Shown in pieces: positions 2,437 to 61,180 of a stretch of 64,000 nt of DNA (the first letter of the stretch is position 1; each line of letters begins with the position of its first letter). Made by a program: the position numbers and the translations under genes. The notes beneath the pieces are model-generated. The model saw nothing but the letters and a program-made list of their open reading frames with translations, was not told the DNA's origin and did no database searches. The DNA comes from Kudoa neothunni (Eukaryota; Animalia; Cnidaria), in assembly GCA_964304625.1 (NCBI GenBank), contig OZ199839.1, positions 8,075,885 through 8,139,884 on the forward strand. The letters run 5' to 3'.

Positions 2437-5293
2437 ATGAAAGACTCTGTTTACGTTTTAAGAATTTGTACTTATCTGACGTGTATATACACACAAACGG
2501 TCCTGGGAGGTGCTTCAAATCCAACTACTACTGAAACCCCTTTAATTTATAAACTTGTGGAAGAGAGCAATCAATTAAACGTTAATTTTATATTAAATGG
2601 AAATTATTATACTGGGGACAAGAAATGTCATATAAAAAAAGCTGATGATGATGGCACGAAACCTTGTTGAAATTGCTACATGCCCCGGTGATGCTTATAC
2701 AACAGATGGTGAAAAATGTGTTTGGACATGTTCAGGAAGTACCAATAAGCTAGCTTTTGACAAGTTCTCCCCAAAGACTAAATATATCGCTATCTTTAGC
2801 GATAATGACGCAGCGACCGCGGCTTCGAAAAATAATAATGGGATTGTATTTGGATTGGAATTTTGTAACTAAAGGATCTGTGTTCAGTAAATTTCCTTTA
2901 GCATTACTGGTGAATCCGCGAGTTTCAATAACAAGGGAGGGGAAAAAACTGAAATTGAGCACAAAAGCTTGTAACTCGGTGAAATGTCCCATATTTTACA
3001 AGGGCGTGATATATGATGAGGGAACAACTCAGAGAAGTGGCATTGCAAATATTGAAAGTGAAATGGAGTTTAATTTGATGATTCCACATTATGCAATGAA
3101 ATGCGATAATTATCCCAGTTTCTTTTACACCCTGCAAAATAAATACACTCTTTTTAACATAGATGTTTATCAACCACAATATTACGTGACCTCTAGTTCG
3201 AGTGCTCCAACGAAGTATATGCTAAAATTTACAAACAAATTTCCCTTCGAAACGTGTCTTTTCAGTATAAGAGAAGTGCCAACAGCAGGTAGTAACGGTG
3301 GATACACATCGAAATGTGGTTCAGCAGATAAATGTTATGCGCCATGTAATAATGTTGAACTTGAATTCACAGCATCCAAGTCTGTTGTTGAAATATCGAT
3401 TAAAACCAGACACGTACCACTGACCATCAATAACATCCCTTATATTGGGTATATTCAAAAAAAATATGGTAATCCAAAAACATTTTAACTATGATAATCT
3501 TCTTATAGTTGTCATCGAAACTACTGCTCCTACCTTATTGTCAGAGCATTCATCTACTGGTGTTAAGTTAAATGTTCCCTTGTTTCAATCACAAGCTGCT
3601 GTTAAATTTTCTGGATGTACTGTAACTTATTATGAAGCAGACAAACCAAAACCTGCTGACCTTGTTCCTGATGGGGCGAAATGTGGAACTGGTAAAACAG
3701 ACTGTGGCAACGAGTGCACGACTGCTCTAGAAATTACAGGATTGGATAGTGGAAAACCATATATTCTTGAAATTGCAGCTGGTAATAACGCTAGCCCTCT
3801 TCAAGATTTTAAAGAACGTGTATTCTTTCGAACAGGTACTATAATCGAAAAAAATATTCTTTTAAATAAATATATAGCAAAGAAATCTGATCCAACCTTT
3901 TCTGAAACAACTCCAACAGTAACGGATACAACCGCGTCTGTTAAAGCAATAGATGTAACTGGTACAATCACAAAAGACGACAAAACTTGTGCTTACTATA
4001 TAAGCCCTCATAGAAAAGATGTATATGTGTGTGCAATGTGCGAAGATAGTTATCCTTGCAGGGGTTTTTGCAAGGATTCTCAAAAAATTATTGGGTTAAT
4101 GCCTGGAACCGAATATGACCTAAAGGTAGTTGCACATGAGGATTATGGAGAAAAAGAACATAAAATCACAACGAGTATATAAATTGATGAATTCTAATTA
4201 TATAACTAATTATGTTTCAAGCTTTGTCAACGCTCACACTAAAATCGGAATTTATAGACAAAGGCTTTAAGGTGATAGGTGTACTTTCAACACCATATCC
4301 TACGGCTGTTTGTCACTATAAAGTAAACGTAAAAAAAGGGAGTGAATCCGAGTTGGTCTACCAATGCCCACCATTGGCTTCTACAGCAAACACTGGAGCA
4401 ACCTCTAAAGTATCCAAGACTACTAAAATAGCACTAGCTAGGACAACTAATGGACACCAACCACAGAACGTGCCGCCTCCAAATAAAAAACCAGAAATCA
4501 CTCCATGCACACAACCTCCATTGTGCACTGATATTATATTCAAAGAAGGATACGAAGCAGACAAGGAATATGTAGTTTTGGTTACTGCTGTCGGCAGATC
4601 TGCAGAAACTACCATCAAAATACCCATAAGTAATAAAAAATCTAATTCTAAATTCATATCGTTTATATTTTAATTACATTTTTAAAATTATATACATTAA
4701 TTTTTTATTATACTAAACTTTAATTTAGGCCCACAGTCCATCCCCACTAATATCCAATCAAATTAACTGTGGTGTTTACAAGAGAAGGCGAAAACCATAA
4801 AAGTTAAAAACTTCTCTTCCTACAGAGCGTTGATGAGCAGTCGTTATGCAAATGGGAATTGAAAAATTGGGATGATCCATCCAAACCAATCGTCCAAAAA
4901 TGCATGGCAACTGGTGAACAAGGTTGTTCAGCTTTTCCATCATGCAAGGAATTTTCAATTTCAAATGTGGATAACACCAACAATTATCGTTTGATGTTAT
5001 ATCATAGTACAGATAGCAACATCTCTGGTTTTGTCGAATCCAGAAAGGTACTTGAAAAAATGTTACTGGTCATTATTTCTGATAATTTGATTAGATGATG
5101 AATCAAACAAATCCATGTAACATCAAGTTGTTAAATTATAATTGATTTATTTTAGGTCAAAAAAATACAATGTACTTATTGATGGAGATATCTTGTTAAT
5201 CAATTATTTTAGAATTATTGCTGTAGTAGTTCCAGTGCTCATCATTGTTGTTGGTGTGGATTCTATTTCGGATACTGGAAAAATAAAAACTAG
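2437..5293 (+). pseudogene. A1: Cys-rich FN3-like multidomain type I membrane protein, frameshifted as given
   Basis: GT-AG introns at 2865-2901, 3469-3508, 3836-3877, 4175-4221, 4630-4728, 5048-5094, 5117-5155 and 5172-5212. Collinear with intact A3. Carries several 1-nt indels and lacks intron 1; some indels may be sequencing error. Confidence 0.8.
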
Positions 5294-12983: not shown

Positions 12984-15887
12984 CTAGTTTTTATTTTTCC
13001 AGTATCCGAAATAGAATCCAACGCCAACAACAATGATGAGCGCAGGAACTACTACAGCAATAATTCTAAAATAATTGATTAACAAAATATCTCCATTAAG
13101 AAGTACATTGTATTTTTCGACCTAAAATAAATTAATAAATAAGAATTCAAAATTTTTATTTTACATGGATTTATTTGATTCATCATCTAATCAAAAATGA
13201 GAAATAGCGACCAACAACATTTTTTTCAACTACCTTTCTGGATTTCGACAAAACCAGTGATATTGTTATCCGTACTATGATACAACATTTAAACGGTAAT
13301 TGTTGGTGTTATCCACATTTGAATTGTAAATTCCTTGCATGATGGAAAAACAGAGCAAACCTTGTTCACCAGTTGTCATGCATTCTTGGACGATTGGTTT
13401 GGATGGATCATCCCAATTTTTCAATTCCCATTTGCATAACGACTGTTCATCAACGCCTGTAGGAAGAGAAGTTTTAACTTTTATGTTTTCGCCTTCTCTT
13501 GCAAACACCACAGTTAATTTGATTGGATTATTAGTGGCGGTAGGTTGTGGATCTAAATTAAAATTTAGTATAATAAGAATTAATTTACATATTTTAATGA
13601 TTTAAAAATTTAATTAATTTAGAATTAGATTTTTTATTACTTATGGATATATTGATGGTAGTTTCTGCAGATCTGCCGACAGCAGTAACCAAAACTACAT
13701 ATTCCTTGTCTGCTTCGTATCCTTCTTTGAATATAATATCAGTGCACAATGGAGGTTGTGTGCATGGAGTTATTTCGGTTTTTTTATTTGAAGATGGCAG
13801 ACCTTGAGGTTGTTGTCTATTAGTTGATCTAGATAATCGCTATTTTAGAAGTTTTTGGTGCATTGGAGGATGGGCCAGTGTTAGTTGTTGATGACGGTGG
13901 TGGGCATTGATAGACCCAATTCGGATTCTTGTCCTTTCTTTACTTTTACTTTATATTGACAAACAGCTGTAGGATATGGTGTTGAAAGTACACCTGCCAC
14001 CTTGAGCCTTTTTCTATAAATTCTGATTGTAGTGTGAGCGTTGACAAAGCTTGAAACATAATTAGTTATATAATTCGAGATCAATTTATTTATATACTTG
14101 TTATAATTCGGTGTATCTTATCCCCATATTCCTCATGAGCAATTACCTTTAGGTCATATTCAGTTCTAGGCATTAACCCAATAATTTTTTGAGAATCCTT
14201 ACAAAAAACCCCTGCAAGGATAACTATCTTCGCATACGGCACACACATATACATCCTTTCCATGAGGGCTTATATAGTAAGCACAGGTCTTGTCTTGTGC
14301 GTTAAGTGGTCCAGTATCTGTTATTGCCTTAATTGATGCATTCGTATCCTTCACAATTGGTTTTGTTTCCGAAAAGGTAGAAGTGCCCTTTTTCTCTATT
14401 TATTCATCAAGAAATTTTTTTTCTATTGTGTTACCTGTACGAAAGAATATGTGTTCTTTAAAAACCTTGAAGAGGACTAGCGTCATTGTCTGCGGCAATT
14501 TCAAGAATATATGGTTTCCCATTATCAAGCCCTGTAATCTCCAGAGAAGCAGTACACACGTTGTCACAGTTTGTTTTACCAGTTCCACATTTGCCCTCCA
14601 GGAGTAGTAGATCTAGGTTTGTCTGCCTCAAAATAAGTTACAGTACAAGTAGAAAATTTAGGCTCATTTGTTGGTTGAAACAACTGAACATTTAATCTAA
14701 CACCAGTAGGTGAGTATGTTGACAATAATGGAGTGGCAATAGTTTCTGTGACAACTATGAGAAGGTTATATTTGAATAAATATCCATTAAATACCAAATT
14801 TTTTCTGAATATATCCTTCATACGTGTCTTCACTTTTGGCCAAAGATACATGTCTAGTTTGAATCAATACTTCAACAACGGACTTGGAATCGTCGAAAAT
14901 GAGCTCAACATTATTACAAGGTGCATGACATTTACTTGCTGAACCACACTTTGACTTGTATTCAACACTGTTATCGGCTGTTGACTTATCTCTTATACTG
15001 AAAAGACACATTTCGAAGGAAATTTGTTTGTAAACTTTAACATATACTTCGTTGTATCACTCGAAATAGAGGTCACGTAATATTGTGGTTGATAAATATC
15101 AATGTTTTAATAGAGTATATTTATTTTGCAGTTTGTAAAAGAAGCTAGGATAATTGTCGCATTTCATTTCATAGTGTGGAATCAATCAAATTAAAATCCA
15201 TTTCACTTACAATATTTTCTGTGCAAGCATTTTTAGCTTCTCCTTCCGCATATTTCACGCCCTTGTAAAATATGGGGCATTTCACCGGATTACATGTTTT
15301 TGTACTAAATTTCAGTTTTTTCACATTTTTCTCGATTGTAACCTGTGGGTTAAACCAATAATGCTAAATGAAATTTACTAAAAATATTCGATGCTTTAAT
15401 TACGCCATTCTAATCCAAACATCCAGCCCCCATCTTTATTTTTATTTGCAGCAGTCGCTGCTGAACTATCCGTAAAGACGGCAACATACTTTGTCCTCGG
15501 AGGAAACTTGTCAAAACCAAGATTATGTTCATTTCCTGAGCATGCCCAAACACATTTGCTATTATTTGCATCGTCAACGCGACCAGAGCAATCGTTAATT
15601 TCAACAAGATCCGTGTCTACATCATTAGATTTTTTGATGTGGCAACTTTTCTCCGTAGAATAGTCGCTCCCAGTTAAAATTAAACTTAACTTTAATTGAT
15701 TGCCCTCTTCCACAAGTTTGTAAATTAAAGGGGTTGCAGTAGAGACTGGGTTTGGAGCACCTCCTGGACAGTTTGCGTGTATATAAGTGAAAAGTAGGCT
15801 ATACGTTATTAGTAGCATTCTGTTGTAGTATGTGTATTTACGCAACAGAAAATTACAAATTCCTAAAAGGTAGATAAAGTCTTTCAT
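12984..15887 (-). pseudogene. A2: family A paralogue, frameshifted as given
   Basis: MKDFIYLLGICNFLL signal exon, same exon layout as A3, and TM exon ending GFYFGYWKNKN*. Multiple 1-nt indels split the ORFs. Confidence 0.8.
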
Positions 15888-24036: not shown

Positions 24037-26045
24037 ATGAAATTAGTTTTTTTGTGCTTTACTCTACTTTATACAGGTAACCTAATTCAATATTGGTTTA
24101 TACATAATTTCGGGCGTAGTCCAACTTCATAGGTATTATATCGTGAGAAATAATGAGCTTCACAAGAATACCATTCATCTGAACTTAGAAGGAAATCCAA
24201 CTCATCTTTGTCGCATCAAATTATTCACCAAAGATGAGACTTCTTATTTTTATCGAGATGTTAATTGTGGGGGTCGAAATATTTGTGAAGTTCCCTGCAG
24301 TGGAGAGTACACTATTCACACCGACCACATAGCTCCTCATCATTTTCTTCAAATAGCCTCAAAGGCTAAAACAGACTACCTCAAAGTTGTTCACAGTATA
24401 TTCATGGTGAGTCATATTTTTAAGTGATACTGTTCTCTAGCCACTTCATCTGCTCCTTTCTCCTCATACCACTTTGATGATTCAAGTGTGATCTTTATCA
24501 CCAAGCATCTGTGCGAAGAGTCGCCTTTCGTTTGTCAGATTAGATCTGGACAGTTTACCGTTAAGAGTTACACTATTGATTCACAGCCTCGATGTGGTGA
24601 TGAATACTTGCTGAGCAGTTATTACAATATTTACAATAAACCGCTTGAACTATACTGCGGACCTCACAATCCAAAACTTTTCTTTGATAAAAATATGTTA
24701 CTAAATAACAAAGCAAACCTACTGAAAAGATTTCCTGTGAGAATCAAAAATAATACTGCCGCAAACAAAATGAACATCATATTCGATGAACCCATTCCCG
24801 ACACAATTTGTAAATTCGAAATCGCTAAAAAGACTGGTACTTTAGAATCTAAATGCGAAGTCACTAATGATGGTGCCTGTTACCAAATGTGCCAAAATGT
24901 TACAATGGAGACAAATTATATTACTACCGATAAAAATTTTAATGTTAAAATAACCACCAGGGATGGAATAACCGAATCATTGTTGATGTCAAGTAATTTA
25001 GTAATATTTAAACCTCTTTTATATTTTTATTAGACGAAAAAAATGATATTGAAATAAAGGATATAGGCAAGTATAAAGCTACTTTAGGGGTCGCCGCACT
25101 TCATGAGAATAGTGCTCAATGCAAGGTTGAACTATATTTACAAGCTAACTACGTAAAAATAGACTCAAAATCTGTAGGATTACAAGGGTATACAAATTTT
25201 GTAACATGTAATGCTGATATAACTATATTAAATCTTATGGCTGATACAAAATATGTTGTCAGCGTACAATATAAATCTTCTAGTAGTGAGGCTGCAGTGC
25301 ACATTAATAAAATTTTTAAAACAGGTAAATGAATTTATTTTATAGCAATTAACAATATTTATAAAAGCTAAAATTGGTGACGTTACCGCTGAAATCACAA
25401 CATACCCTCGAAATGTTGTTATTATTCCACAACAAATAGAACATGAAAATTATCAAGCAGAGTGCGTAATAATGCAAGCATTAAATGGCAACCAGGATTT
25501 TGTTCGATCAGTGTGTGAAGAATCACACAACTGCTTGGGGTTGTGCACCTCAACATTTACCATCACCAGGTTGAAACCGGATACCGAATATAAATTTAAA
25601 GCTGTTCCATTGAGTTTCTATGTGGAGACCGACGCTCTAACGAAAAGCGTTCGAACAGGTATTCATTGTTTGTAAATTTAAAATTGACAAACTTTTAGAG
25701 TCTTTATTCAAGAAGGTGGAGCTTGAATATAAATGGACGGAAAATGATTTGGAGATAACAGTAAAGGTGCAAGGTAGGAATGATGGAATTTGCGACTTTA
25801 CCTTTGTGGAAAAAACTGAAGGAAAGGAAACAAAACTACTTGCTGTACACGACCAAACAAACGGCTGGAATGAACCATGCAACTCCAAAATCACCTTTTT
25901 TGATGTTCCTGAGTACAAATCAGCCACAGTGATAGTCCAACGCAGATATGACGGTGAGCCAGTTGAGTTGGAACTCTTTATCACAGACCCAGAAGCTGTG
26001 ACTGCATCGACAACTGAAACAACTGCTACTCCTACAAGCACCTAA
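24037..26045 (+). CDS. B1: secreted Cys-rich FN3-like six-module protein with Thr-rich tail, about 598 aa
   Basis: Five phase-1 GT-AG introns (24077-24119, 24396-24440, 24993-25033, 25325-25367, 25659-25698) give an open 1797-nt CDS. Hydrophobic N-terminus, FN3-like motifs LMADTKY and LKPDTEY, and C-terminus TTETTATPTST*. Confidence 0.88.
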
Positions 26046-27866: not shown

Positions 27867-30128
27867 ATGTTGGTCATTGCATTGTTAATCATTTCTCTCT
27901 GCTACAATGGTGAAATAAGCTGGAAGTGGGATTATCTATAATAGATATATTTAGCCCACTCACACAAATACTACGTCCAACGAGATCAAACCGAATTAGA
28001 GGATACAATCCATTTAAAACTTGAAGGAGTTTCTGGAAGTAAATGCAACGTTCAATTGTTGGAAAGAAACGAATTTTTCTATCACTATATTGGGAGTGAA
28101 TCTGAAGGAAAACAACTTAAGGATGTCTCTTGTGTCGGGAAATACACTATTCCAACTGGAGCTGCTTTTCCATTCTATTATGTACAGATAAGATCCGAAT
28201 ATGCAACTGAAACTCTTAAAATAATCCATAGTAATTCTATTTTTTGAATATTTTTTCCTAATTTTCTTATAGTCACTGACAGTATTCCTCAAACTCAATT
28301 TAAAGTAAATGAAACTTCAATCGAATTCACCACTAAAAATGTCTGCAGTCATCCTCAAACTTGTAAACTAACAAGTGGTGACAAGGTCCTGGATGAGTTT
28401 ACTCCAACCTCTGAAACCGAGTGCAACACTGAAACCAAGCTCACCGGGTTTTTTGATTCAGTCGGTGATTCAGTCGAACTCTCTTGTGGTGTCAATCAGC
28501 CAAAAATACACATGTATAGAAAAAATAACAAGGCTATGGAATTCAGTCCTTTGGACAAACTTCCCTATCACATTGTTAAAGGAGATGCGGATAATAAGAT
28601 AAAAATCGTTTTCGATGAAGATATGAGAGACGAAATATGCAAATTTGAAATAAAAAAAGATGATACTAGTGCTGCTTATACATCAAAGTGCTCGGTTACT
28701 GGAGATGACACCAATTGTTATCAACTTTGCACTGACGTTGAAATGGAGTTAACATTTGCTGGCACAGAAAAAGATTTTAAAGTTAAAGTATCGACTAGAA
28801 ATCATACAGGAGCAGAGAAAATTTTAAGAAGTAAAATCCTTGTTTAAATAATTTTATTTAAATGTCAATTAGTTGACAAAAGTAACCTAGAAGTTACTCC
28901 GAAAGAAACTAATGCAACTCTTTCTATCGCGGCCCTTAAAGATACAGATTTGACCTCTGCATCTTGTTCCATTGAGTTGAGAAAGCAGGGATTTCCTAAA
29001 TTCAACATTGGCGTGAAATGCAATGCCGATTCAACTACAGCATGTCCAACAAATTGTGATGATGCTACCATTCTTGGTCTAGAACCGAATACAAAATATA
29101 TCGTCAAAGTGACTTATACTGGCACTGGTGAAAGTTCAAAAACATATAATGCAGAAAAGTTATTTAAAACAGGTAATAAATAAAAATTAATTTATCTAAA
29201 ATTTAATTAAGCTGACTACAATATAACGCAATTGCCTGAGATTAAAGCATATTACGAGCACGTAAAAATGACTGTAGCACCGAACGTGGCTCTGTTTGAC
29301 AGAGTATACTGTAAAATTCAACAAAAAATGGTGGGCGAAACTGCTTTCAGCCCATCTGAATGCGAAGAATCGGTTGATTGTTCAGGTTTATGTGGACAAC
29401 CACTCACTATTAAAAACCTTTTTCACGATACTGAATACGAATTTAAATATTTATTTGGAAAGTACGTTAGTGACCTTGATAAAAACAAGGTGACAGTATC
29501 GACAAGTAATGTACAATATTAATCTCTCAATAACATTTATTAAGTTGCAACGCTTCAAAAAATCAATGTTACCCACACATGGAATAACACCGATTTGATA
29601 GTCACAACGACAATGGAGCAGATGGACCCAGACCAAATTTGTGATTTTACATTTGCCCAAATAGTAGATGGAGTTGTCAAATATACTTACGGATTATATG
29701 ATAAAACTACTGGATGGGAGGGGAAATGCAACCAAGAAATAACCTTTTACAACACTGCTTCCTACAGAAGGGGCTCAATGAAAGTACAGGCCAGATACGT
29801 TAGTGAGCCGATCGTTGTGAGCCTTTGGGCTGGAGGAAATGAGGATAATTTTGATCCAAACTTTCCAGAAACTGGTAAACAAGGTAAATAATATTATATA
29901 AACATTAATTATAATCCATTTTAGGCACTTCGAATAGGTAAGATAGTTTATGTTAGAGTATTTAATTAACTACTAACTTTAATTTAGCGCTAATGTTGGT
30001 GGAACCAAAATTCTGTAATATTATCTGTTCCTATACAATTCTAATGATGATTTAGGTTGATTGTTGGTGGCGTTTTAATAGCATTGATGGTTTTTGCTAT
30101 TGTTTTCTTGGTTTTGACAAAGAAATAA
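27867..30128 (+). CDS. B2: Cys-rich FN3-like six-module membrane-anchored protein, about 640 aa
   Basis: Eight GT-AG introns (27910-27954, 28231-28272, 28831-28872, 29173-29211, 29506-29544, 29884-29924, 29938-29987, 30015-30055) give an open 1923-nt CDS. Signal MLVIALLIISLCYNA and C-terminal LLIVGGVLIALMVFAIVFLVLTKK*. Confidence 0.9.
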
Positions 30129-34120: not shown

Positions 34121-37029
34121 CTAGTTTTTATTTTTCCAGTATCCGAAATAGAATCCAACGCCAACAACAATGATGAGCGCAGGAACTACTACAGCAATAA
34201 TTCTAAAATAGTCGATTAACAAAATATCTCCATCAATAAGTACATAGTATTTTTTGACCTAAAATAAATCAATTATAATTTAACAACTTGATGTTACATG
34301 GATTTGTTTGATTCATCATCTAATCAAAATATCAGAACTAATGAACACTAATATTTAATCAATTACCTTTCTGGATCTCGACAAAACCAGAGATATTGTT
34401 ATTGGTACTATGATACAACATCAAACGGTAATTGTTGGCATTATCCACATTGGAAATTGAAAATTCCTTGCACGATGGAAAAACAGAACAACCTTGTTCA
34501 CCAGTTGCCATGCATTTTTGGACGATTGGTTTGGATGGATCATCCCAATTTTTCAATTCCCATTTGCATAATGACTGTTCATCAACGCCTGTAGGAAGAG
34601 AAGTTTTAACATTTATGCTTTCGCCTTCTCTTGTAAACACCACAGTTAATTTGATTGGATTTTTAGTGGGGTTAAATTGTGGATCTAAATTAAAATTTAG
34701 TATTACTAGAATTAATGTACATATTTTTAATAATTTTAAAAATTTAATTAATTTAGAATTAGATTTTTTATTACTTAAGGGTACTTGGATGGTAGTTTCT
34801 GCAGATCTGCCGACAGCAGTAACCAAAACTTCATATTCCTTGTCTGCTACGTATCCTTCTTTGAATATAATATCAGTGCACAATGGAGGTTGTGTGCATG
34901 GAGTGATTTCTGGTTTTTTATTTGGAGGCGGCACGTTCTGTGGTTGGTGTCCATTAGTTGTCCTAGCTAGTGCTATTTTAGTAGTCTTGGATACTTTAGA
35001 GGTTGCTCCAGTGTTTGCTGTAGAAGCCAATGGTGGGCATTGGTAGACCAATTCGGATTCTTGCCCTTTCTTTACTTTTACTTTATATTGACAAACAGCT
35101 GTAGGATGTGGTGTTGAAAGTACACCTGTCACTTTGAAGCCCTTTTCTATAAATTCCGATTGTAGTGTGAGCGTTGACAAAGCTTGAAACATAATTAGTT
35201 ATATAATTAGAATTCAACTATTTATATACTCGTTGTAATTTTATGTTTTTTTTCTCCATAATCCTCATGTGCAACTATCTTTAGGTCATATTCGGTTCCA
35301 GGCATTAATCCTATAATTTTTTGTGACTCCTTGCAAAAACCCCTGCAAGGATAACTATCTTCGCACATGGCACACACATATACATCTTTTCCATGAGGGC
35401 TTATATAGTAAGCACAAGTCTTGTCAGTGGATGCAATTTCTTCATTCCCATCTATTGCCTTAACAGACGCGGCTGTATCCTTCACAGTTGGGGTTGTTGC
35501 AGAAAAGTTAGATTCAGATTTTTTATCTAAATATTTATTTAAAGAATATTCGTTTTCTTTTATATTACCTGTACGAAATAATATAATTTCTTTAAAACCT
35601 TGAAGAAGACCATTGGTATTCTTTGCTGCAATTTCAAGAATATATGGTTTTCCACTATCCAGACTTGTAATTTTTAGAGCAGTAGTGCACTCCGTTCCAC
35701 AGCTTGGACTGGCGTCTTCACATTCCGCCGTTACATCGGAAGCAGGTTTAGGTTTGTCTGCTTCATAATAGGTTACAGTACATGTAGAAAATTTGGGATC
35801 ATTTGTTGGTTGAAACAACGGAACATTTAATGTAACACCAGTAGGTGTGTGTTCAGACAATAAGGTAGAAGTTTCAGTTTCCGTGATAACTATGAGAAGA
35901 TTACCAAAGTTAAAATGTTTATGGAATACCAAATTTTTTCTGAATATATCCTTCATATGTAGTGCCACTTTTAGTTAACGATACGTGCCTGGTTTGAATC
36001 AATATTTCTACAACCGACTTGGAATCTTCGAATACAAGCTCAACATTATTACAAGGTGCAAAACATTTTTTGTTGTCCGAACCACAATTTGATTTGTAGT
36101 CTTCGGTATTTCCGGCTGCAAGTTCTGTTGACGGATCTCTTACACTGAATAGACACATTTCGAAGGGAAATTTGTTCGTAAACTTTAGCATATACTTCGT
36201 TGTAGCACTCGAACTAGGGGTCACATAATATTGTGGCTGATAAACATCAAATTTTGTAAGAGTGTATTTATTTTGAAGTTTATAGAAGAAACTGGGGTAA
36301 TTATCGCATTTCATTTCGTAATGTGGAATCATCAAATTAAAATCCACTTCACTTTGGCTATTTCCAGTGCAACTACCTCCAGCCGTTCCTCCATCATATT
36401 GCACGTCCTTGTAATACATGGGACATTTCACTGGTTTACAAGTTTTGGTGCTAAATTTCAGTTTTTGACCACTTTTCGCAATTGTAACTTGCGGATTGAT
36501 CAGTAATGCTAAAAGAAAATTACTGAAGATATTTGATGCTTTATATACGCAACTCTAATCCAAATACAGCCCCATCATTATTTTTTGTTGCAGCGTTCGT
36601 TGCGACAGTATCCGTAAAAACGGCAATATACTTAGTCTTCGGGGAAAAATTTCCAAGAGCGATTTTATTAGTATTTACCGAGCATGCCCAAACACATTGG
36701 TTAGTATCTGTTCCTTCAACACGACTAGGGCAATCACCAATTTCAACAAGATCCGTGTCTACATCATTAGATTTTTTGATATGACAATTTTTCCCCCCAT
36801 CATAATCTGCTCCACTTAATATCAAATTAAGTTTTAAGTCATGTGCCTCTACCACAAGTTTATAAATTAAAGAGTTTTCGGTAGCGGCTTGAATTGAACC
36901 ATCCCTCTGATCTCCATCGGTGTATATAAACGAAAAATAGGCTATAAATAATTTGTAATTTTTGTTGTAATTATTGTATATACTTGACAGAAAAGTACAA
37001 ATTCCTAAAAAGTAGACGAAGTGATTCAT
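34121..37029 (-). CDS. A3: intact Cys-rich FN3-like seven-module type I membrane protein, about 826 aa
   Basis: Ten exons with GT-AG introns (e.g. 36942-36983, 35527-35568, 34685-34774) join without frameshift. Signal-like N-terminus. FN3-like motifs FSPKTKY, LDSGKPY and LMPGTEY. TM IIAVVVPALIIVVGVGFYFGYW followed by KNKN*. Confidence 0.9.
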
Positions 37030-42123: not shown

Positions 42124-44273
42124 TAGTAGGCAACCGATATTGCACACTTTTGAGAAAATTATTAGATTGAAATAAAATATATGTATAGGTTTTTAGCGTT
42201 TTAACTAAATATAAATAATTTCAAATAGTTAAAATGAGATAATAAATAGCACGTGACTCACCGATTTTTCACACTTTCCTCAACCATCTTTGATTAAATT
42301 TTTGTTTGATATCGGTTAAATAATACAGATGGAAAGAACTATTGCTAAAGTTGTTTGAACTTTAGAAGAAAAATACAAAATAATAAAGTATTTCGAAAGT
42401 TTACCCTTTAAACGCGCTAAGATAGCAACAGTAAAACATTTCCAAATTACGAATATTTCCATCCCGAATGGGATTCTTCGTAAGAAAGAGAAGATAATTT
42501 CTATTGTTGAAGGAGGATTGGCACAAAATAAAAGAAAAAACATTCATAACGTATCAAACATTAATTATGATCAAGATGTTTATGATTGGATCTGTTTGAT
42601 GATGGATAAAAAAATCGGAATCACCGCCTCTGATATCAAAAATAAAAGAATTGAGATTTCTGTTGAAAATAAGAAGCCAAGAAGTGTGACAATTTGGTGG
42701 TTTAAGGATTTTAAAAAGTGATTTAACCTAAGAAAAATTAATTTCCATGGCGAAGCCGCAGATGTGGATTCTGCGGTCGTTGAATAATGGATTCCACAAC
42801 TAAAAGACATATGTGAAATTAATAATTCAGATCGTATATATAATATCGACGAATCTGCATTATTCTACCAGCAACAGAGAGGTATATGTAGTTTTTTAAC
42901 GTTTTGATTCATTTTGTAGGTAAAAGTTTTGTCGTTTCATCAGAGAGGAGTTTAAAGGGGACCGAAAAATCTATGAAGCGAGTAACTATTTTATTAGGTA
43001 CCTCAATGAGTGATGAAAAGCTCAAACCACTAATAATCGGAAAACATAAAAACCCTCGTTGTTTTAAGAATATTAAACAACTTCCTGTGTCATATGAAAA
43101 CAATAATAAAGGTTGGATGAATAGTGATGTATTCTTGAGATGTATAATCAAGCTTAATCAATTATTTGAGAAAAGGAATAAATATGTGTTATTGTTTCTT
43201 GATAATACGTCCTGCCATTGTAAAAAAAATTTGAGGAATATAAAAATGGTTTTTCTCCCCAAAAAACTACGAGTGTTTTACAACCTCTTGAACAGGGGAT
43301 AATATATTCATTTAAATCTGCCTATAAAAAAGCTATGATTAAGCGATATATTGCTCGTGTTGAAGCAGGTATTGATCCCATCCCTCCGAACATAATAGAG
43401 GCAATGTTTCTTATAAGAGACGCTTAGGATATGGTTTCTCCAGAAACAATTAGAAATTGTCCTCTATAGCATTAGGCGGTGGTTTAATAATAAATAATGC
43501 ATCTAATTGAGCAAGCAATGATATCATATGCCCAGAGAAAATTAATGTCGAAATAAACGAAATGACTCAGGAGGAGGATGAAATTGGTTGCTTATATGAT
43601 GGCTATTCTACATTAGATTTAGATAGTAGAGATAATTTAGTGGATTTTATTAAGTATAGCGAAGGATCTGGTGAGGAATTGCTTGAAGATAAATCTGAGG
43701 ATACCCTATTCTGAATTTCAGAGGCTATTGATTCCATCAGCGAACTTAAAAAATTCTTTCTGAGAATGATGTTGATCGATTTAGAATTCTTTCAAATCTT
43801 GAGAACGACGCATACGATATCATGTGGAAAAATATTAAACTATCGAAAATAACAGATTTTTTCAAACGTTAGAATATAAATATGGTCTAGTTTACTAAAT
43901 TGCATCTCATCTTTATCCAAACATGTTACCTCGGCGATTAAGAGTTCAAATTTTACTTTTAAGTGTTAAAAATGTAATATTTAAATCAGAGACTCCCAAC
44001 TGGTTGTGCGAACTTTGGTCTCAGGTGGTGCGAGATCCGATCAAAATTGAAAATAATTTTTGATAAATTTCAAGCCAGTTACACCTTATCGTGTGCAAAG
44101 GGCTGAAAATTTCGTTTTGTCAAAAAATGGGGATGCGAGTCTAGTTTTAGTTGGGAAGCGCTGACTTAAATGGAGGTTGCGCATGCACAAACGTGTGTAA
44201 AATCGGTTCTGGATCGATTTCGCATTTTTTTTTCATGGTCCGGGAGGGATTATGCAAAATCGGTTGCCTACTG
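42124..44273 (+). mobile_element. pogo/Tigger-like transposon; transposase pseudogene about 42329-43872
   Basis: TIRs TAGTAGGCAACCGAT / ATCGGTTGCCTACTG-TA. Motifs YNIDESALF, KLKPLIIGKHKNPRCFK, GWM and LLFLDNTSCH. A probable short intron lies at about 42882-42919. Confidence 0.92.
43987..44163. mobile_element. 177-bp hAT-type MITE nested in the Tigger element
   Basis: TIRs CAGAGACTCCCAACT / AGTTGGGAAGCGCTG and 8-bp TSD ATTTAAAT/ACTTAAAT. Confidence 0.7.
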
Positions 44274-46253: not shown

Positions 46254-48518
46254 TTATTTCTTTGTCAAAACCAAGAAAACAATAGCGAAAACCATCAGTG
46301 CTATTAAAACGCCGCCAACAATCAACCTAAATCATCATTAGAGCTGTATGGGAACAGATAATATTACAGAATTTTGGTTCCACCAACATTAGCGCTAAAT
46401 TAAAGTTAATAGTTAATTGAATACTCTAACATAAAACTATCTTACCTATTCGGAGTGCCTAAAAAGGATTATTATTAATAGTTATTTAATAAAATTTACC
46501 TTGTTTACCAGTTTCTGGAAAGTTTGGATCAAAATTATCCTCATTTCCTCCAGCCCAAAGGCTCACAACGATCGGCTCACTAACGTATCTGGCCTGTACT
46601 TTCATTGATCCCCTTCTGTAGGAAGCAGCGTTGTAAAAGGTTATTTCTTGGTTGCATTTTCCCTCCCATCCAGTGGTTTTATCATATAATCCGTAAGTGT
46701 ATTTGACAACTCCATCTACTATTTGGGCAAATGTGTAATCACAAATCTGGCCTGGGTCCATCTGTTCCATTGTCGTTGTGACTATCAAATCGGTGTTATT
46801 CCACGTGTGGGTAACATTGATTTTTTGAAGCGTTGCAACTTAATAAATGTTATCGAGAAATTAATATTGTACATTACTTGTCGATACTGTCACCTTGTTT
46901 TTATCAAGGTCACTAACGTACTTTCCAAATAAATATTTAAATTCGTATTCAGTATCGTGAAAAAGGTTTTTAATAGTGAGTGGTTGTCCACATAAACCTG
47001 AACAATCAACCGATTCTTCGCATTCAGATGGGCTGAAAGCAGTTTCGCCCACCATTTTTTGTTGAATTTTACAGTATACTCTGTCAAACGGAGTCACGTT
47101 TGGTGCTACAGTCAATTTTACGTGTTCATAAAATGCTTTTATTACAGGTACTTGCGTTATATTGTAGTCAGCTTAATTAAATTTTAGATCAATTACTCAT
47201 TATTTATTACCTGTTTTAAATAGCTTTTCTGCAATATACGTTTTCGTACTGTCACCGTTTTTTGTGTAAGTCACTTTAACGATATATTTTGTATTTGGCT
47301 CGAGATCAAGGATGGTGGCATCTGAGCAATCGGTTGGACATGCTGTAGTTGAATCAGCATTGCATTTCACGCCAATGTTGAATTTAGGGAATTCTTGCTT
47401 TCTCAACTCAATAGAACAAACTGCGGTGTCCAAATCTGCATCTTTAAGGGCCGCGATAGAAAGAGTTGCATTGGTTTCTTTTGGTTCTACACTTAGGTCA
47501 CCTTTGTCAACTAATTGACATTTAAATAAAATTATTTAAACAAGGATTTTACTTCGTAGAGTTTTCTCTGCTCCTGCATGATTTCTAGTGGTTACTTTAA
47601 CTTTAAAATCTTTCTTTGAAGTATCACTAGTGTCCAAATCCATTACGACGTCAGTGCAGAGTTGATAACATTTATCGTCATCCGAGGGAGCAGAGCATTT
47701 TGAAGTATAAGTACTTTCATCTTTTTCTTTAATTTCAAATCGGCATATTTCATCTTGTATATCTTCATCGAAAACAATTTTTATTTTATTAGTTTGACCA
47801 CTGACTTTTTCGATGTGATAGGGAAGTTTGTCCAATGGACTGAATTCCATGGCCATATTATTTTTTCTATACATGTGTATTTTTGGCTGATTGACTCCAC
47901 AAGAGAGTTCTACTGAATCATCGATTGAATCAAAAAATCCGGTGAGCTTGGTTTCAGCGTCGCATTCGGTGTCAGCGGTCGGAGTGAACTGATCCAGGAC
48001 TCTATCTCCACTTGTTAGTTTACAAGTTTGAGGATGACTGCAGACATTTTTAGTGGTGAATTCGATTGAGGTTTCGTTTACTTTAAATTGAGTTTGAGGG
48101 ATAGTGTCAGTGACTACAAGAAAATTAGGGGAAAATTTCTAAAAATTGAATTACTATGGATTATTTTAAGAGTTTCAGTTGCATATTCGGATCTTATCTG
48201 TACATAATAGAATGGAAAAGCAGCTCCAGTTGGAATAGTGTATTTCCCGACACAAGAGACATCCTTAAGTTGTTTTCCTTCAGATTCACTCCCAATATAG
48301 TGATAGAAAAATTCGTTTCTTTCCAACAATTGAACGTTGCATTTACTTCCAGAAACTCCTTCAAGTTTTAAATGGATTGTATCCTCTAATTCGGTTTGAT
48401 CTCGTTGGACGTAGTATTTGTGTGAGTGGGCTAAATATATCTATTATAGATAATCCCACTTCTTGCTTATTTCACCATTGTAGCAGAGAGAAATGATTAA
48501 CAATGCAATGACCAACAT
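46254..48518 (-). CDS. B3: inverted near-duplicate of B2, intact
   Basis: Same nine exons as B2. Exon 2 appears identical, the C-terminal exons are nearly identical, and modules 2-4 are diverged. Confidence 0.9.
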
Positions 48519-58259: not shown

Positions 58260-61180
58260 CTAGTTTTTATTTTTCCAATATCCGAAATAGAATCCCACAC
58301 CAACAACAATGATGAGAACTGGAACCACTACAGCAATAATTCTAAAATAATTGATTAACAAGATATCTCTATCAATAAGTACATTGTATTTTTCGACCTA
58401 AAATAAATTAATAAATAAGAACTCAACAATTTTATTTTACATGGATTTGTTTGATTCGTCATCTAATCAAAATATCAGAAATAATGACCAATAATATTTA
58501 ATCAATTACCTTTCTGGATCTCGACAAAACCAGAGATATTGTTATTGGTACTATGATACAACATCAAACGGTAATTGTTGGTATTATCCACATTTGAAAT
58601 TGAAAATTCCTTGCATGATGAAAAGCTGAACAACCTTGTTCACCAGTTGTCATGCATTTTTGGACGATTGGTTTGGTTGGATCATCCCAATTTTTCAATT
58701 CCCATTTGCATAACGACTGCTCATCAACGCCTGTAGGAAGAGAAGTTTTAACTTTTATGTTTTCGCCTTCTCTTGTAAACACCACAATTAATTTGATTGG
58801 ATTATTAGTGGCGGTAGGTTGTGGATCTAAATTAAAATTTAGTATAACTGGAATTAAATGAACATATTTTTAATAATTTTAAAAATTTAATTAAAATATA
58901 AAAGATATGAATTTAGAATTAGATGTTTTATTACTTATGGGTACTTTGATGGTAGTTTCTGCAGATCTACCGACGGCGGTAACTAAAACTTCATATTCCT
59001 TGTCTGCTTCGTATCCTTCACTGAATATAAAATCAGTGCATAATGGCGGTTGTGCGCATGGAGTGATCTCGGTTTTTTTATTTGAAGGTGGCAGACCTTG
59101 TGGTTGATGTCCATTAGTTGGCCCTAGATATCGCTATTTTAGAAGGTTTAGATGCTGCAGAGGGTGTCCCAATCTTTGTTGTAGAAGCCAATGGTGGGCA
59201 TTGGTAGACCAACTCGTATTCATTCCCTTTTTTTACGTTTACTTTATAGTGACAAACAGCTGTAGAATATGGTGTTGACAGTACACCTATCACCTTAAAG
59301 CCTTTGTCTTTAAATTCCGATTTTAGTGTGAGCGTTGAAAATGCTTAAAAGAAAATTAATTATATAATTCGAGGTCAATTATTTATTTACTCGTTGTAAT
59401 TTTGTGTTTTTTTTCTCCATAATCCTCATGTGCAACTACCTTATAGATCATATTCAGTTCCGGGCATTAACCCAATAATTTTTTGAGAATCCTTGCAAAA
59501 ACCCCTGCAAGGATAACTATCTTCGCACATGGCCACACACATATACATCCTTTCCATGAGGGCTTATATAGTAAGCACAAGTCTTGTCTTGTTGCGTTGA
59601 GTGTTTCGCTATTATCTATTGCTCTAATTGATGCAATTGTATCCGTTACTGTTGGATTTGTTTCAGAAAAGGTGGATTCAGGGTTTTTAGCTATATATTT
59701 ATTTTATAATTATTTCTTTTTATTATATTACCTGTTCGAAAGAATATATGTTCTTTGAAGTCTTTAAGAACACCATTGGTGTTGGTTGCTGCAATTTCAA
59801 GAATATATGGTTTTCCATTAGAAAGCTCTGTAATCGTTGTTAGCAGTGCATCCTTCTCCGCATCCTCCACTGGTTCTCCCACATTTCACATCTTCAGGAG
59901 AAGTTGGTTTAGGTTTATCTGCTTCGTAATACTTTACCGTACATCCATCAAATTTATGATCCTTCTCTGGCTTGAACAACAGAACATTTAATGTAACACC
60001 AGTAGGTGTGTCGTGTTGACAATAAGGTAGAATCAGCAGGTTCCGTGATAACTATAAGAAGGTTACAAATAAGTAAATATCCATGAAATACCAAATTTTT
60101 TCTGAATATACCCAGGATACGCAGCGCTATTGATGGTCATTTGGTACGTGTCTAGTTTGAATCAATATTTCAACAACAGACTTGGATGCTGTGAATTCAA
60201 GTTCAACATTATTACATGGCGCATAACATATATTTGTTGAACCACACTTGGATGAGTAGACATTGTTAGCGCCAGTCGTTGGTACTTCTCTTATACTGAA
60301 AAGACACATTTCAAATGGAAATTTGTTTGTAAACTTTAGCATATATTTTGTTGTAGCACTCGAAGTTGAGGTCACGTAATATTGTGGTTGATAAATATCA
60401 ATGTTTAGTAGAGTAAATTTATTTTGCAGTTTGTAAAAGAAACTAGGATATTTATCACATTCATTTCATACTGTGGAATCATCAAATTAAACTCCAATTC
60501 ACTTTCAATATTTTCGGTGCAACTTCCCCTATCTGTTCCCTCCTGGTATTTTACATCCTTGTAAAATATGGGACAGTTTACCGATTTACAAATTTTAGTG
60601 CTCAATTTCAGTTTTTGACCACTTTTTGCTATTGTAACTTGCGGATTGACCAATAATGCTAATAAAAATTTACTGAAAATATTAGATGCTTTATTTACGC
60701 AACTCTAATCCAAATACAGCTCCACCATTATTTTTATTTGAAGCGTTTGTTGCGTCATCATTTGTAAAGACAGCAATATACTTTGTGCTCGGAGAAAAAT
60801 TGTCAAGACCTAGTTTATTGGTGCTTTTTGAGCATGTCCAAACACACTTGCCACTAGCTCCGCCTCCTTCACTATCAGGACATGTAGTAATTTCAACAAG
60901 GTTTGTTTCATCGTCATTTGATATTTTGATATGACACTTTTTGATCCCCGAGATAGTCATTTCCATTTAATAATAAATTAACATTCAATCGGGTCGAATC
61001 TTTCACAAGTTTGTATGTTAAAGAGTTCTCAGTAGTAACTGGATTTTGAGTATCTCCCTGACCTCCTTGGGTGTATATAAGCAAATAAGGGGCTATAAGT
61101 TATTATTAATATGTCTTTGGAAATTGGATATATACATGACAATGAAGAACAAATTCCCAAAGGTAGACAAAAGCTTTCAT
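58260..61180 (-). pseudogene. A4: family A paralogue, frameshifted as given
   Basis: Full-length and collinear with A3 from MKAFVYLWEF to GFYFGYWKNKN*. Many 1-nt indels. Confidence 0.8.

What the first reader, a model, noticed from the sequence alone, without database searches (positions are those of the whole stretch)
35569..36941. Cassette-like dimorphic blocks in the variable N-terminal modules of family A
Module 1 alternates in blocks of about 10 aa: TPLIYK (A1,A2) vs ENSL.YK (A3,A4); KSNDVDTDLVEI.DC and CVWAC (A2,A3) vs NLVEI.TCP and CVWTC (A1,A4); FDKF and ATAA (A1,A2) vs L.NF and ATNA (A3,A4). Module 3 pairs A1/A4 (REVPT, ELEFTASK) vs A2/A3 (RD.ST, YEGYIQKKF). Module 4 pairs A1/A2 (KCGTGKT.C, ASPLQ) vs A3/A4 (NTNG). 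Loops between cysteines are unique in every copy, while the distal half of module 5, module 7 and the TM are nearly invariant. This suggests combinatorial shuffling of old variants anchored on conserved stretches.
Basis: partly seen in the sequence, partly recalled or inferred. Interest (0 to 1): 0.8.

Follow-up and report, generated by a model that had tools for sequence, protein, structure and literature searches.

The report
Patchwork copies of parasite surface-protein genes
The alternating shared blocks are real, but they come from ordinary copying of short patches between about fifteen neighbouring copies of a very large, apparently undescribed surface-protein gene family in a fish parasite (most likely Kudoa neothunni), not from a two-variant cassette system.

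Summary
Region 35569-36941 is exactly exons 2-4 of an intact 10-exon, 826-aa minus-strand gene (A3). It encodes a type-I membrane protein built of seven FN3/Ig-like beta-sandwich modules.

Across exons 2-4 the three possible pairings of A1-A4 cluster beyond chance (61 runs against 81.4±5.1, p=5e-5). Module 1 alone is not significant (p=0.07).

"Dimorphic" is a sampling effect. With 17 further copies of the subfamily, each block has 6-20 variants. The nearest relative of A3 changes 21 times over 31 windows, among 14 copies.

The mosaic is DNA-level, non-reciprocal gene conversion:
- It reaches introns.
- It links inverted copies.
- It is confined to one 220-kb cluster.
- It ignores module boundaries.
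- It is strongest in the 3' half (dS 0.21 against 0.61).

Variation sits in loops (omega about 1; framework about 0.3). Nothing shows programmed shuffling.

The genome matches the published low-coverage HiFi assembly of Kudoa neothunni. The frameshifts in A1, A2 and A4 are probably consensus errors.

The scan has noted and followed up this family before, on other DNA of the same genome.

The parts
36984..37029 (-). A3 exon 1 (ATG at 37029; start of signal peptide), ends in phase 1
   Evidence: GT-AG intron 1 of 42 nt
36549..36941 (-). A3 exon 2 = module 1, the N-terminal FN3-like beta sandwich with four conserved Cys; the most variable module
   Evidence: AF2 pLDDT 82.6. The best VIA matches are cytokine-receptor FN3 domains (Z 5.2-7.3). 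At least 150 matches in the genome.
35930..36508 (-). A3 exon 3 = modules 2 and 3, two tandem beta-sandwich domains; the best-conserved exon across the superfamily
   Evidence: pLDDT 77.7. Foldseek matches cytokine-binding two-FN3 regions at E=2.6e-5. 432 first-look candidates in the genome.
35569..35889 (-). A3 exon 4 = module 4, FN3-like with hypervariable Cys-bounded loops
   Evidence: Pfam fn3 E=6.1e-5, 23.6 bits, just under the 25-bit cut-off. Atlas features point to fn3. Entropy profile.
35230..35526 (-). A3 exon 5 = module 5 (variable start, near-invariant Cys-rich distal half)
   Evidence: weak match to FN3_DSCAM-DSCAML_C
34775..35182 (-). A3 exon 6 = module 6; carries a 201-nt tract identical to the inverted copy A1
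   Evidence: (A1-A3 35051-34851)
34367..34684 (-). A3 exon 7 = module 7, nearly invariant within the subfamily
   Evidence: (dS 0.21)
34298..34319 (-). A3 micro-exon 8 (22 nt), conserved in all 21 copies
   Evidence: needed to keep the TM exon in frame
34244..34258 (-). A3 micro-exon 9 (15 nt), conserved in all 21 copies
34121..34202 (-). A3 exon 10: transmembrane helix, a cytoplasmic tail of about six residues, and the stop codon
   Evidence: CDS 2481 nt = 826 aa with a single terminal stop
2437..5293 (+). Copy A1. It lacks intron 1. It is 99-100% identical to an outside copy (L013, 50 kb away) through exons 1-5 and mosaic after that. It has several 1-nt frame breaks.
12984..15887 (-). Copy A2, full length with about 14 one-base frame breaks. 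Exon 3 to the start of exon 4 is identical to outside copy L015 apart from homopolymer indels.
58260..61180 (-). Copy A4, full length with about 11 frame breaks; a mosaic of L012/L014, L010, L009 and L024-like stretches

Best explanation
The stretch is exons 2-4 of an intact gene. The gene encodes a type-I membrane protein: signal peptide, seven FN3/Ig-like beta-sandwich modules, one TM helix and a six-residue tail. It belongs to a lineage-specific family of several hundred genes in a myxozoan fish parasite, most probably Kudoa neothunni.

The alternating pairings among the four copies in the window are footprints of ordinary germline, homology-driven, non-reciprocal gene conversion. This acts among about 15 paralogues clustered in 220 kb, on top of gene and segment duplication.

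Shown:
- Patches are short (median about 110 nt, up to about 640 nt).
- They ignore exon and module boundaries.
- They include introns and synonymous sites.
- They join copies in opposite orientation.
- They are frequent enough in the 3' half to homogenise it.

In exons 2-4 only older, shorter, decayed patches remain (apart from recent tracts such as A2-L015). Loop residues there change at about the neutral rate while the beta-strand framework is conserved.

Inferred: higher divergence of the 5' modules suppresses conversion there, and/or converted tips are selected against. The protein is a surface-exposed molecule with a variable tip (adhesin, receptor or coat). Its role is unknown.
For: Gene model: 10 exons, GT-AG introns of 39-90 nt, internal exons in phase 1-1.

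Four-copy analysis:
- Over the whole gene, 220 informative sites split 86/76/58 among the three pairings. They form 89 runs against 145.8±7.0.
- Intron 3 shows the same pairing pattern as the exons: A1-A3 88% and A2-A4 82% identity, other pairs 62-70%.

21-copy analysis:
- PHI for exons 2-4 is 0.690 against 0.752±0.004.
- There are 67 globally significant identical fragments, 59 of them downstream of the region.
- All 48 pairs involved lie inside C2:7.95-8.17 Mb. None involves the six dispersed copies. 23 of the 48 pairs are in opposite orientation.
- Tract ends are not at exon borders.
- The nearest-copy painting of A3 switches 21 times in 31 windows, among 14 copies.
- Each named block has 6-20 variants.

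Substitution rates:
- dS falls from 0.61 in exon 2 to 0.21 in exon 7. dN/dS is 0.50, 0.28 and 0.59 for exons 2, 3 and 4, and 0.27-0.35 for exons 5-7.
- Across subfamilies and in a related metagenome scaffold (L002), exons 6-7 are no better conserved than exon 2. The 3' constancy is therefore specific to the subfamily.

Fold and location of variation:
- The modules are beta sandwiches of FN3 type.
- 26 of 28 hypervariable positions in exon 2 and 24 of 28 in exon 3 lie outside strands.
- Loop patches have omega 0.6-2.2 and the framework about 0.3.

Family size: at least 150-182 scored matches per exon, with 264-432 first-look candidates.

Species: the genome is 40.26 Mb in three large contigs plus an 18-kb one. 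C2 is 12.04 Mb. GC is about 30% and introns are 40-47 nt. (TAAACC)n sits at one chromosome end only. Unique k-mer depth is 2-7. There are 3 zf-C4 and about 12 homeobox hits. This matches PMC12239612: 40.2 Mb, N50 12.0 Mb, three chromosomes plus a mitochondrial contig, GC 30.41%, intron 49 bp, k-mer coverage about 7, the same telomere motif at one end.
Against: At about 28% divergence, part of those pairings may be homoplasy.

Among A1-A4 themselves no single tract in exons 2-4 passes the global test.

The assembly is low-coverage HiFi of a diploid parasite taken from host data. Some 'paralogues' could be retained haplotigs; the blocks L011-L012-L013 and L023-L014-A1 look like a duplicated segment.

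There is no RNA evidence that any copy is expressed, and no population data. The direction and timing of the conversions are not resolved.
Confidence: 0.75

Rival explanations
1. Programmed combinatorial antigenic variation. Silent donor copies (the frameshifted A1, A2, A4) feed cassettes by somatic gene conversion into an expressed gene (A3) during infection, as with VSG, vlsE, msp2 or chicken pseudo-V genes.
For: There is one fully open copy beside three frame-broken full-length copies in the window. The genes are mosaics with variable surface loops. Myxozoans are reported to show antigenic variation (bioRxiv 10.64898/2026.02.11.705288).
Against: The 'silent' copies are complete genes with start codon, signal-peptide exon and conserved 5' flank.

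Most family members elsewhere are open exon by exon.

The frame breaks are homopolymer-length indels. They occur at about 1 per 100-130 nt even in tracts with no substitutions. No stop codon has arisen by substitution in any copy. Read-derived contigs specific to A2 differ from the assembly by indels only. Together with about 7x HiFi coverage, this points to consensus errors.

Conversion is busiest in the constant half, not in the variable tip.

The locus is about 4 Mb from the chromosome end.
Confidence: 0.07
2. No exchange in the variable modules. The block pairings in exons 2-4 are chance homoplasy and shared ancestry among saturated sequences, and recombination is limited to the 3' half.
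For: Exon 2 runs test p=0.07 and PHI p=0.19; exon 4 PHI p=0.24. The three pairings are near-equal, as a star tree with multiple hits would give. No A1-A4 tract in the region is individually significant.
Against: The region as a whole is significant (p=5e-5; PHI 0 of 500 permutations).

There are clear recent tracts inside it: A2-L015 36402-35821, L012-L015 35676-35579, and A1-L013 at 99-100% through exons 1-5.

The 5' end of exon 2 is 91% identical between A3 and L015, and 92-96% between A4 and L012/L014, with abrupt switches.
Confidence: 0.08
3. Ancient balanced dimorphism. Two old allelic lineages per block are kept by balancing selection and reassorted, as in Plasmodium MSP-type dimorphic blocks.
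For: Among the four copies each block shows two states, and intron 3 shows the same pairing.
Against: With 21 copies every block has 6-20 variants. For six of the ten blocks, at most 5 of the 17 outside copies carry any variant seen in A1-A4.
Confidence: 0.03
4. Assembly artefact. The mosaics arise from haplotype switching or chimeric consensus in a low-coverage meta-assembly.
For: Coverage is about 7x, the assembly was purged of haplotigs and curated by hand. Unique depth over A2 is 0-7, and the assembly and the reads disagree on indels.
Against: Patches are 50-640 nt, far below HiFi read length. They are shared between loci 10-200 kb apart and between inverted copies. Read-derived contigs reproduce A2-specific sequence with no substitutions (records 6, 12, 13, 21, 22). 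Conserved single-copy genes are intact.
Confidence: 0.07

Closest known systems
Concerted evolution by interlocus gene conversion in clustered multigene families, for example segmental conversion in Babesia ves1 (PMC4066756, abstract only) and MHC or other receptor clusters (general knowledge)
   Same: Short non-reciprocal patches between neighbouring paralogues, also between inverted ones. Introns and synonymous sites are homogenised. Exchange is restricted to the cluster. Genes are mosaics.
   Different: Here the protein family is an orphan one of FN3-like modules in a myxozoan. No link to expression switching is known. Homogenisation is polar (3' more than 5').
Cassette-type antigenic variation (trypanosome VSG, Borrelia vlsE, Anaplasma msp2)
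   Same: Mosaic surface-protein genes assembled from family members, with variation in exposed loops.
   Different: There is no dedicated expression site, no truncated promoter-less donors, no evidence of somatic change, and the locus is not subtelomeric. Donors and recipients are equivalent complete genes.
Hydractinia Alr immunoglobulin-superfamily genes of the allorecognition complex (Huene et al. 2022, cited in PMC11792419; my knowledge of details)
   Same: Cnidarian lineage. A clustered family of type-I membrane proteins made of tandem Ig-like beta sandwiches, with the most variable domain at the tip.
   Different: Homology was not tested here. This family has a six-residue tail without signalling motifs, hundreds of copies, and FN3-like rather than V-set-like top matches.
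Class I/II cytokine-receptor ectodomains (tandem FN3 modules)
   Same: Best structural matches of module 1 (IFNAR1, IL-9Ra, IL-2Rb; Z 6-7.3) and of exon 3 (common gamma chain, IL-7Ra, gp130; Foldseek E=2.6e-5). Exons are phase 1-1, mostly one module each; exon 3 holds two.
   Different: Sequence identity is 4-13%, no WSXWS-type signature was sought or seen, Z is below 8, and TM-scores are 0.3-0.43. This shows a shared fold class only, not membership.
Giardia-type VSPs and RIFIN/STEVOR-like families reported in Sphaerospora molnari (bioRxiv 10.64898/2026.02.11.705288)
   Same: Expanded membrane-protein families in a myxozoan, proposed to act in immune evasion.
   Different: VSPs have more than 10% Cys with CXXC motifs. 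A3 has 3.6% Cys (30 of 826) and a beta-sandwich module architecture. It is a different family.

Membership tests
Fibronectin type III domain (Pfam PF00041 / FN3 fold) | Sequence match above Pfam's gathering score | tested here: inconclusive
   The ORF spanning exon 4 scores 23.6 bits against a cut-off of 25 (E=6.1e-5). Exons 2, 3, 6 and 7 give no Pfam hit. Atlas features rank fn3 clusters first at 0.94, with recognition below the reliable level.
Fibronectin type III domain (Pfam PF00041 / FN3 fold) | Seven-strand beta-sandwich fold matching solved FN3 domains | tested here: met
   Module 1 model has pLDDT 82.6, and its VIA top 50 are almost all FN3 domains (Z 5.2-7.3, rmsd 2.6-3.6 over 74-88 residues). 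In exon 3, residues 82-192 match fibronectin FN3-1 at Z 7.0, and the pair matches cytokine-binding regions at Foldseek E=2.6e-5. All but two matches have Z below 8 (the exceptions are the Ig-like domain of RgpB, Z 8.3-8.7, over exon-3 residues 1-78), so this shows fold class only.
Interlocus gene conversion / concerted evolution | Phylogenetic incongruence clustered along the sequence | tested here: met
   Runs tests, PHI, 67 globally significant identical fragments.
Interlocus gene conversion / concerted evolution | Acts on DNA irrespective of coding: introns and synonymous sites are homogenised | tested here: met
   Intron 3 pairs as the exons do and introns 5-6 are 77-96% identical. dS drops from 0.61 to 0.21 from 5' to 3'. 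Tracts run through introns.
Interlocus gene conversion / concerted evolution | Non-reciprocal short patches, also between inverted repeats; dependent on proximity | tested here: met
   23 of 48 pairs are in opposite orientation. Median tract is 112 nt. None of the 48 pairs involves copies outside the 220-kb cluster, although half of all possible pairs do.
Cassette-type programmed antigenic variation | Incomplete silent donors plus a distinct expression site | tested here: not met
   All 21 copies are full-length genes with ATG, signal exon, TM exon and similar flanks. The frame breaks look like consensus errors.
Cassette-type programmed antigenic variation | New mosaics arise somatically during infection; one copy expressed at a time | not testable with these tools
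   RNA run X10 gave 0 reads. The assembly paper reports very few parasite RNA reads.
Dimorphic-block antigens (two ancient allelic forms per block) | Only two sequence types per block across the gene pool | tested here: not met
   6-20 variants per block among 21 copies.
Giardia-type VSP | More than 10% Cys with many CXXC motifs | tested here: not met
   A3 has 30 Cys in 826 residues, 3.6%.
Hydractinia Alr-like IgSF | Sequence or profile homology to Alr ectodomains | not tested
This is a resemblance of architecture only.

The most novel reading that the evidence does not exclude
The several-hundred-member FN3-like family is a germline repertoire of variable surface molecules. A myxozoan would use it for immune evasion or for host or self recognition, with local gene conversion continually producing new tip combinations. 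That would be the first such system described in a metazoan parasite. It has been missed by homology-guided annotation (5,316 predicted genes).
Probability: 0.2. Interest if true: 0.8.

Novelty: new member of a known kind. Interest (0 to 1): 0.4.

Why it matters
For this finding, a striking 'dimorphic cassette' pattern turns out to be an artefact of looking at four of about 21 copies. The real process is ordinary local gene conversion.

For the genome, Kudoa appears to carry hundreds of intact genes for an orphan, modular, loop-variable surface protein. The assembly paper (PMC12239612) does not mention them in its text and may have counted them as repeats. If they are expressed, they are prime candidates for the host-parasite interface of an economically important group of fish parasites.

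The 5'-variable, 3'-homogenised polarity is a clean natural example of how conversion and divergence shape a receptor-like family.

The indel analysis also warns that 'pseudogene archives' in this low-coverage assembly should not be taken at face value.

Tried and rejected
- The word-index protein search with the exon 4-5 ORF found nothing. Its length window excludes full-length kin.
- The exhaustive search gave only 22 hits. The best are unnamed metagenome fragments at 47-62% identity, and the rest are generic FN3 proteins.
- Foldseek on module 1 gave no match at E<=0.001. VIA-wide was used instead.
- Read laying on A2 (3,201 letters): the contigs are 90-250 nt, and in the conserved half they come mostly from paralogues. 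Indel rows there cannot be assigned to A2. Only the A2-specific records were used. RNA run X10 gave no reads, so there is no test of expression.
- Searches for Wnt, arthropod cuticle and nematode cuticle-collagen families were negative. Their controls rang nowhere, so they are weak evidence.
- A test of 'anchoring on conserved stretches' was dropped as circular.
- Omega for sites chosen by entropy (1.27) is biased by the way the sites were chosen and is not used as evidence of positive selection. Contiguous loop patches reach 1.66 and 2.18, but these would not survive correction for 13 patches, by my rough estimate.
- Two literature searches for a described Kudoa or myxozoan FN3 family found none.
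- All database searches and folds were made exon by exon, by reference. The joined CDS was only translated locally to check frame and length.
Full report
WHAT IS THERE

The window is AT-rich (about 30% GC) and eukaryotic. Region 35569-36941 is exactly exons 2-4 of a minus-strand gene, A3. I modelled A3 as 10 exons: 37029-36984, 36941-36549, 36508-35930, 35889-35569, 35526-35230, 35182-34775, 34684-34367, 34319-34298, 34258-34244 and 34202-34121. All introns are GT-AG and 39-90 nt long. The CDS is 2481 nt, giving 826 aa with a single terminal stop.

The two micro-exons (22 and 15 nt) are conserved in all 21 subfamily copies. They are needed to bring the transmembrane exon into frame. Exons 2-7 all start and end in phase 1. 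Each encodes one module, except exon 3, which encodes two.

The product has a signal peptide, seven beta-sandwich modules, one TM helix and a tail of about six residues. It has 30 Cys (3.6%).

All searches and folds were done exon by exon, by reference. The joined CDS was only translated locally.

tblastn and a MAFFT alignment give four full-length copies:
- A1 at 2437-5293 (+)
- A2 at 12984-15887 (-)
- A3
- A4 at 58260-61180 (-)

Over the whole gene, 220 quartet-informative sites support the three possible pairings 86/76/58. They are strongly clustered, with 89 runs against 145.8±7.0.

Exon 2 alone gives p=0.07. The stretch downstream of the region gives z=-7.3.

Intron 3 shows the same pairing pattern: A1-A3 88%, A2-A4 82%, other pairs 62-70%. 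The signal is therefore in the DNA, not only in the protein.

THE WIDER FAMILY CHANGES THE PICTURE

Searching the window's own genome, with only 150 candidates scored per search:
- The exon 6 peptide finds at least 182 matches, from 310 first-look candidates.
- Exon 2 finds at least 150 matches, from 264 candidates.
- Exon 3 finds at least 150 matches, all at E<1e-51, from 432 candidates.
- Nearly all matches are open.

About 21 copies form subfamily A (at least 70% identity in exon 6). Fifteen of them lie in C2:7.95-8.17 Mb. I fetched 17 and aligned all 21.

The results are:
- The ten 'dimorphic' blocks have 6-20 variants each.
- In 90-nt windows over exons 2-4, the nearest copy to A3 changes 21 times in 31 windows, among 14 copies. 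It is one of A1, A2 or A4 in only 4 windows.
- A1 is 99-100% identical to L013 (50 kb away) through exons 1-5, then mosaic.
- Exon 3 of A2 is identical to that of L015.
- PHI is significant for exons 2-4 (0.690 against 0.752±0.004), exon 3 and exons 5-7. It is not significant for exon 2 (p=0.19) or exon 4 (p=0.24) alone.
- A GENECONV-like scan gives 67 globally significant identical fragments. The median is 112 nt and the maximum 643 nt. 59 lie downstream of the region and 7 inside it.
- All 48 pairs involved lie within the cluster, and 23 are in opposite orientation.
- Tract ends do not fall at exon borders: 19 of 134 against 22 expected.

MECHANISM

These features are the signature of non-reciprocal interlocus gene conversion between neighbours:
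- DNA-level patches run through introns.
- Patches are shared between inverted copies, which unequal crossing-over cannot do without inversions.
- Exchange is restricted to the cluster.
- Breakpoints bear no relation to modules.

Synonymous divergence falls from 0.61 in exon 2 to 0.21 in exon 7. The 'constant stalk' is therefore homogenised rather than merely constrained.

Consistent with this, exon 6 is no better conserved than exon 2 across subfamilies. For one C3 gene the identities are about 47% (exon 6), 44% (exon 2) and 65% (exon 3). In a related gene on an independent metagenome scaffold (L002), exons 4-5 are 59-63% identical to A3 but exons 6-7 only 41-42%.

SELECTION AND STRUCTURE

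Exon-wide dN/dS is 0.50, 0.28 and 0.59 for exons 2, 3 and 4, and 0.27-0.35 for exons 5-7.

AlphaFold models built on 54-56 paralogue sequences:
- Module 1 is a beta sandwich (pLDDT 82.6). Its best matches are cytokine-receptor FN3 domains (Z up to 7.3).
- Exon 3 forms two beta sandwiches (pLDDT 77.7). Foldseek matches two-FN3 cytokine-binding regions at E=2.6e-5, and fibronectin FN3-1 matches at Z 7.0.

Most of these Z values are below 8, the level the tool's notes treat as common (only the RgpB Ig-like domain matches to the first exon-3 domain reach 8.3-8.7). I therefore claim fold class only.

Hypervariable positions lie outside strands: 26 of 28 in exon 2 and 24 of 28 in exon 3.

Tree-based counts on 120-nt partitions give omega of about 0.3 for the framework and 0.6-2.2 for contiguous loop patches. 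The Cys86-Cys98 loop gives 1.66. None of these would survive correction for 13 patches, by my rough estimate, and parsimony undercounts saturated synonymous changes.

Loops therefore evolve at about the neutral rate. Positive selection is possible but not shown.

THE ORGANISM

The genome is 40,260,978 bases in four contigs: 17.15, 12.04 and 11.05 Mb plus about 18 kb.

Further observations:
- Four HSP70 genes are intact. The best identity is 78%, to many animals.
- There are three nuclear-receptor zinc fingers and only about 12 homeodomains. This points to a strongly reduced animal.
- (TAAACC)n occurs at a single chromosome end.
- Unique k-mer depth in the source runs is 2-7.

Weber, Paulini and Blaxter 2025 (PMC12239612) describe Kudoa neothunni extracted from yellowfin tuna HiFi data. 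Their figures are 40.2 Mb, N50 12.0 Mb, three chromosomes plus a circular mitochondrial contig, GC 30.41%, median intron 49 bp, k-mer coverage about 7, and (TAAACC)n at one end. I take the genome to be that assembly or a near-identical one.

That paper predicted 5,316 genes from protein hints. Its text holds none of the words 'surface', 'paralog' or 'orphan', and so makes no mention of this family. Two literature searches found no description of such a family in myxozoans.

K. neothunni is a muscle parasite of tuna.

THE FRAME BREAKS

A1, A2 and A4 have about 8, 14 and 11 one-base frame breaks. None of the 21 copies has a stop codon created by substitution.

Further points:
- In tracts where A2 and L015 have 0-1 substitutions, A2 still has an indel every 100-130 nt. 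Intact pairs have none over about 1 kb.
- All the single-base indels in these tracts are homopolymer-length changes.
- Read-derived contigs specific to A2 match it with 0 substitutions but 2-3 gaps per 160-220 nt (records 12 and 22).
- Coverage is only about 7x HiFi.

I judge consensus error the likelier cause (about two in three). The 'silent archive' reading should wait for better data.

VERDICT

The 'dimorphic cassette' reading fails. This is a new, very large, orphan FN3-like surface-protein family evolving by duplication and ordinary local gene conversion. Variation is concentrated in loops. No system of programmed shuffling has been shown.

Earlier follow-ups in this scan (s1-701596, s1-701629) reached the same kind of conclusion on other DNA of this genome. 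My tests were made independently on this locus.

Noticed in passing
window 12984-15887 (A2), 58260-61180 (A4), parts of 2437-5293 (A1); also L024: The one-base frame breaks are homopolymer-length indels. They occur at about 1 per 100-130 nt even in tracts with no substitutions relative to another copy. No substitution-made stop codon exists in any copy. Consensus error in a roughly 7x HiFi assembly is the likely cause.
   Followed up: yes
window 34298-34319 and 34244-34258: Two micro-exons (22 and 15 nt) between module 7 and the TM exon are conserved in all 21 copies. Without them the TM exon is out of frame.
   Followed up: yes
window 2437-2500 (A1) and L013: A1 and L013 lack intron 1 together with 13 nt of adjoining coding sequence, and read through in frame from the ATG. 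This is an intron loss shared by two copies 50 kb apart.
   Followed up: partly
window 24488-25033 (+), 28512-29501 (+), 46882-47874 (-): A second, more distant family ('B') of the same superfamily, 22-25% identical to the A3 exon 4-5 ORF, is interleaved with the A copies.
   Followed up: no
window 7746-8180, 16721-18036, 21279-22324, 42904-43302: Transposon remnants. Pfam scans support a PiggyBac-type DDE_Tnp_1_7 (17548-18036), a pogo-type DDE_1 (42904-43302) and, weakly and below the Pfam cut-off, an IS1595/Merlin-like transposase (7746-8180). The ORFs at 16721-17248 and 21279-22324 were not scanned against any family library.
   Followed up: partly
G000 C2:7.99-8.08 Mb (L011, L012, L013 and L023, L014, A1): Gene order and similarity suggest a duplicated three-gene segment of about 45-50 kb (L011~L023, L012~L014, L013~A1) with very uneven identity. 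It could be a segmental duplication later patched by conversion, or a retained haplotig.
   Followed up: partly
L002 (ENA ERZ28624939 scaffold_9927, 1343 bp): An independent metagenome scaffold carries collinear homologues of exons 4-7 with introns of about 45 nt (59, 63, 42 and 41% identity). The family therefore exists in at least one other, unnamed organism.
   Followed up: partly
G000 C2:12039536-12040069: A (TAAACC)n telomere array sits at one end of C2 only, as reported for the Kudoa neothunni assembly. The A cluster lies about 4 Mb from it and is not subtelomeric.
   Followed up: yes
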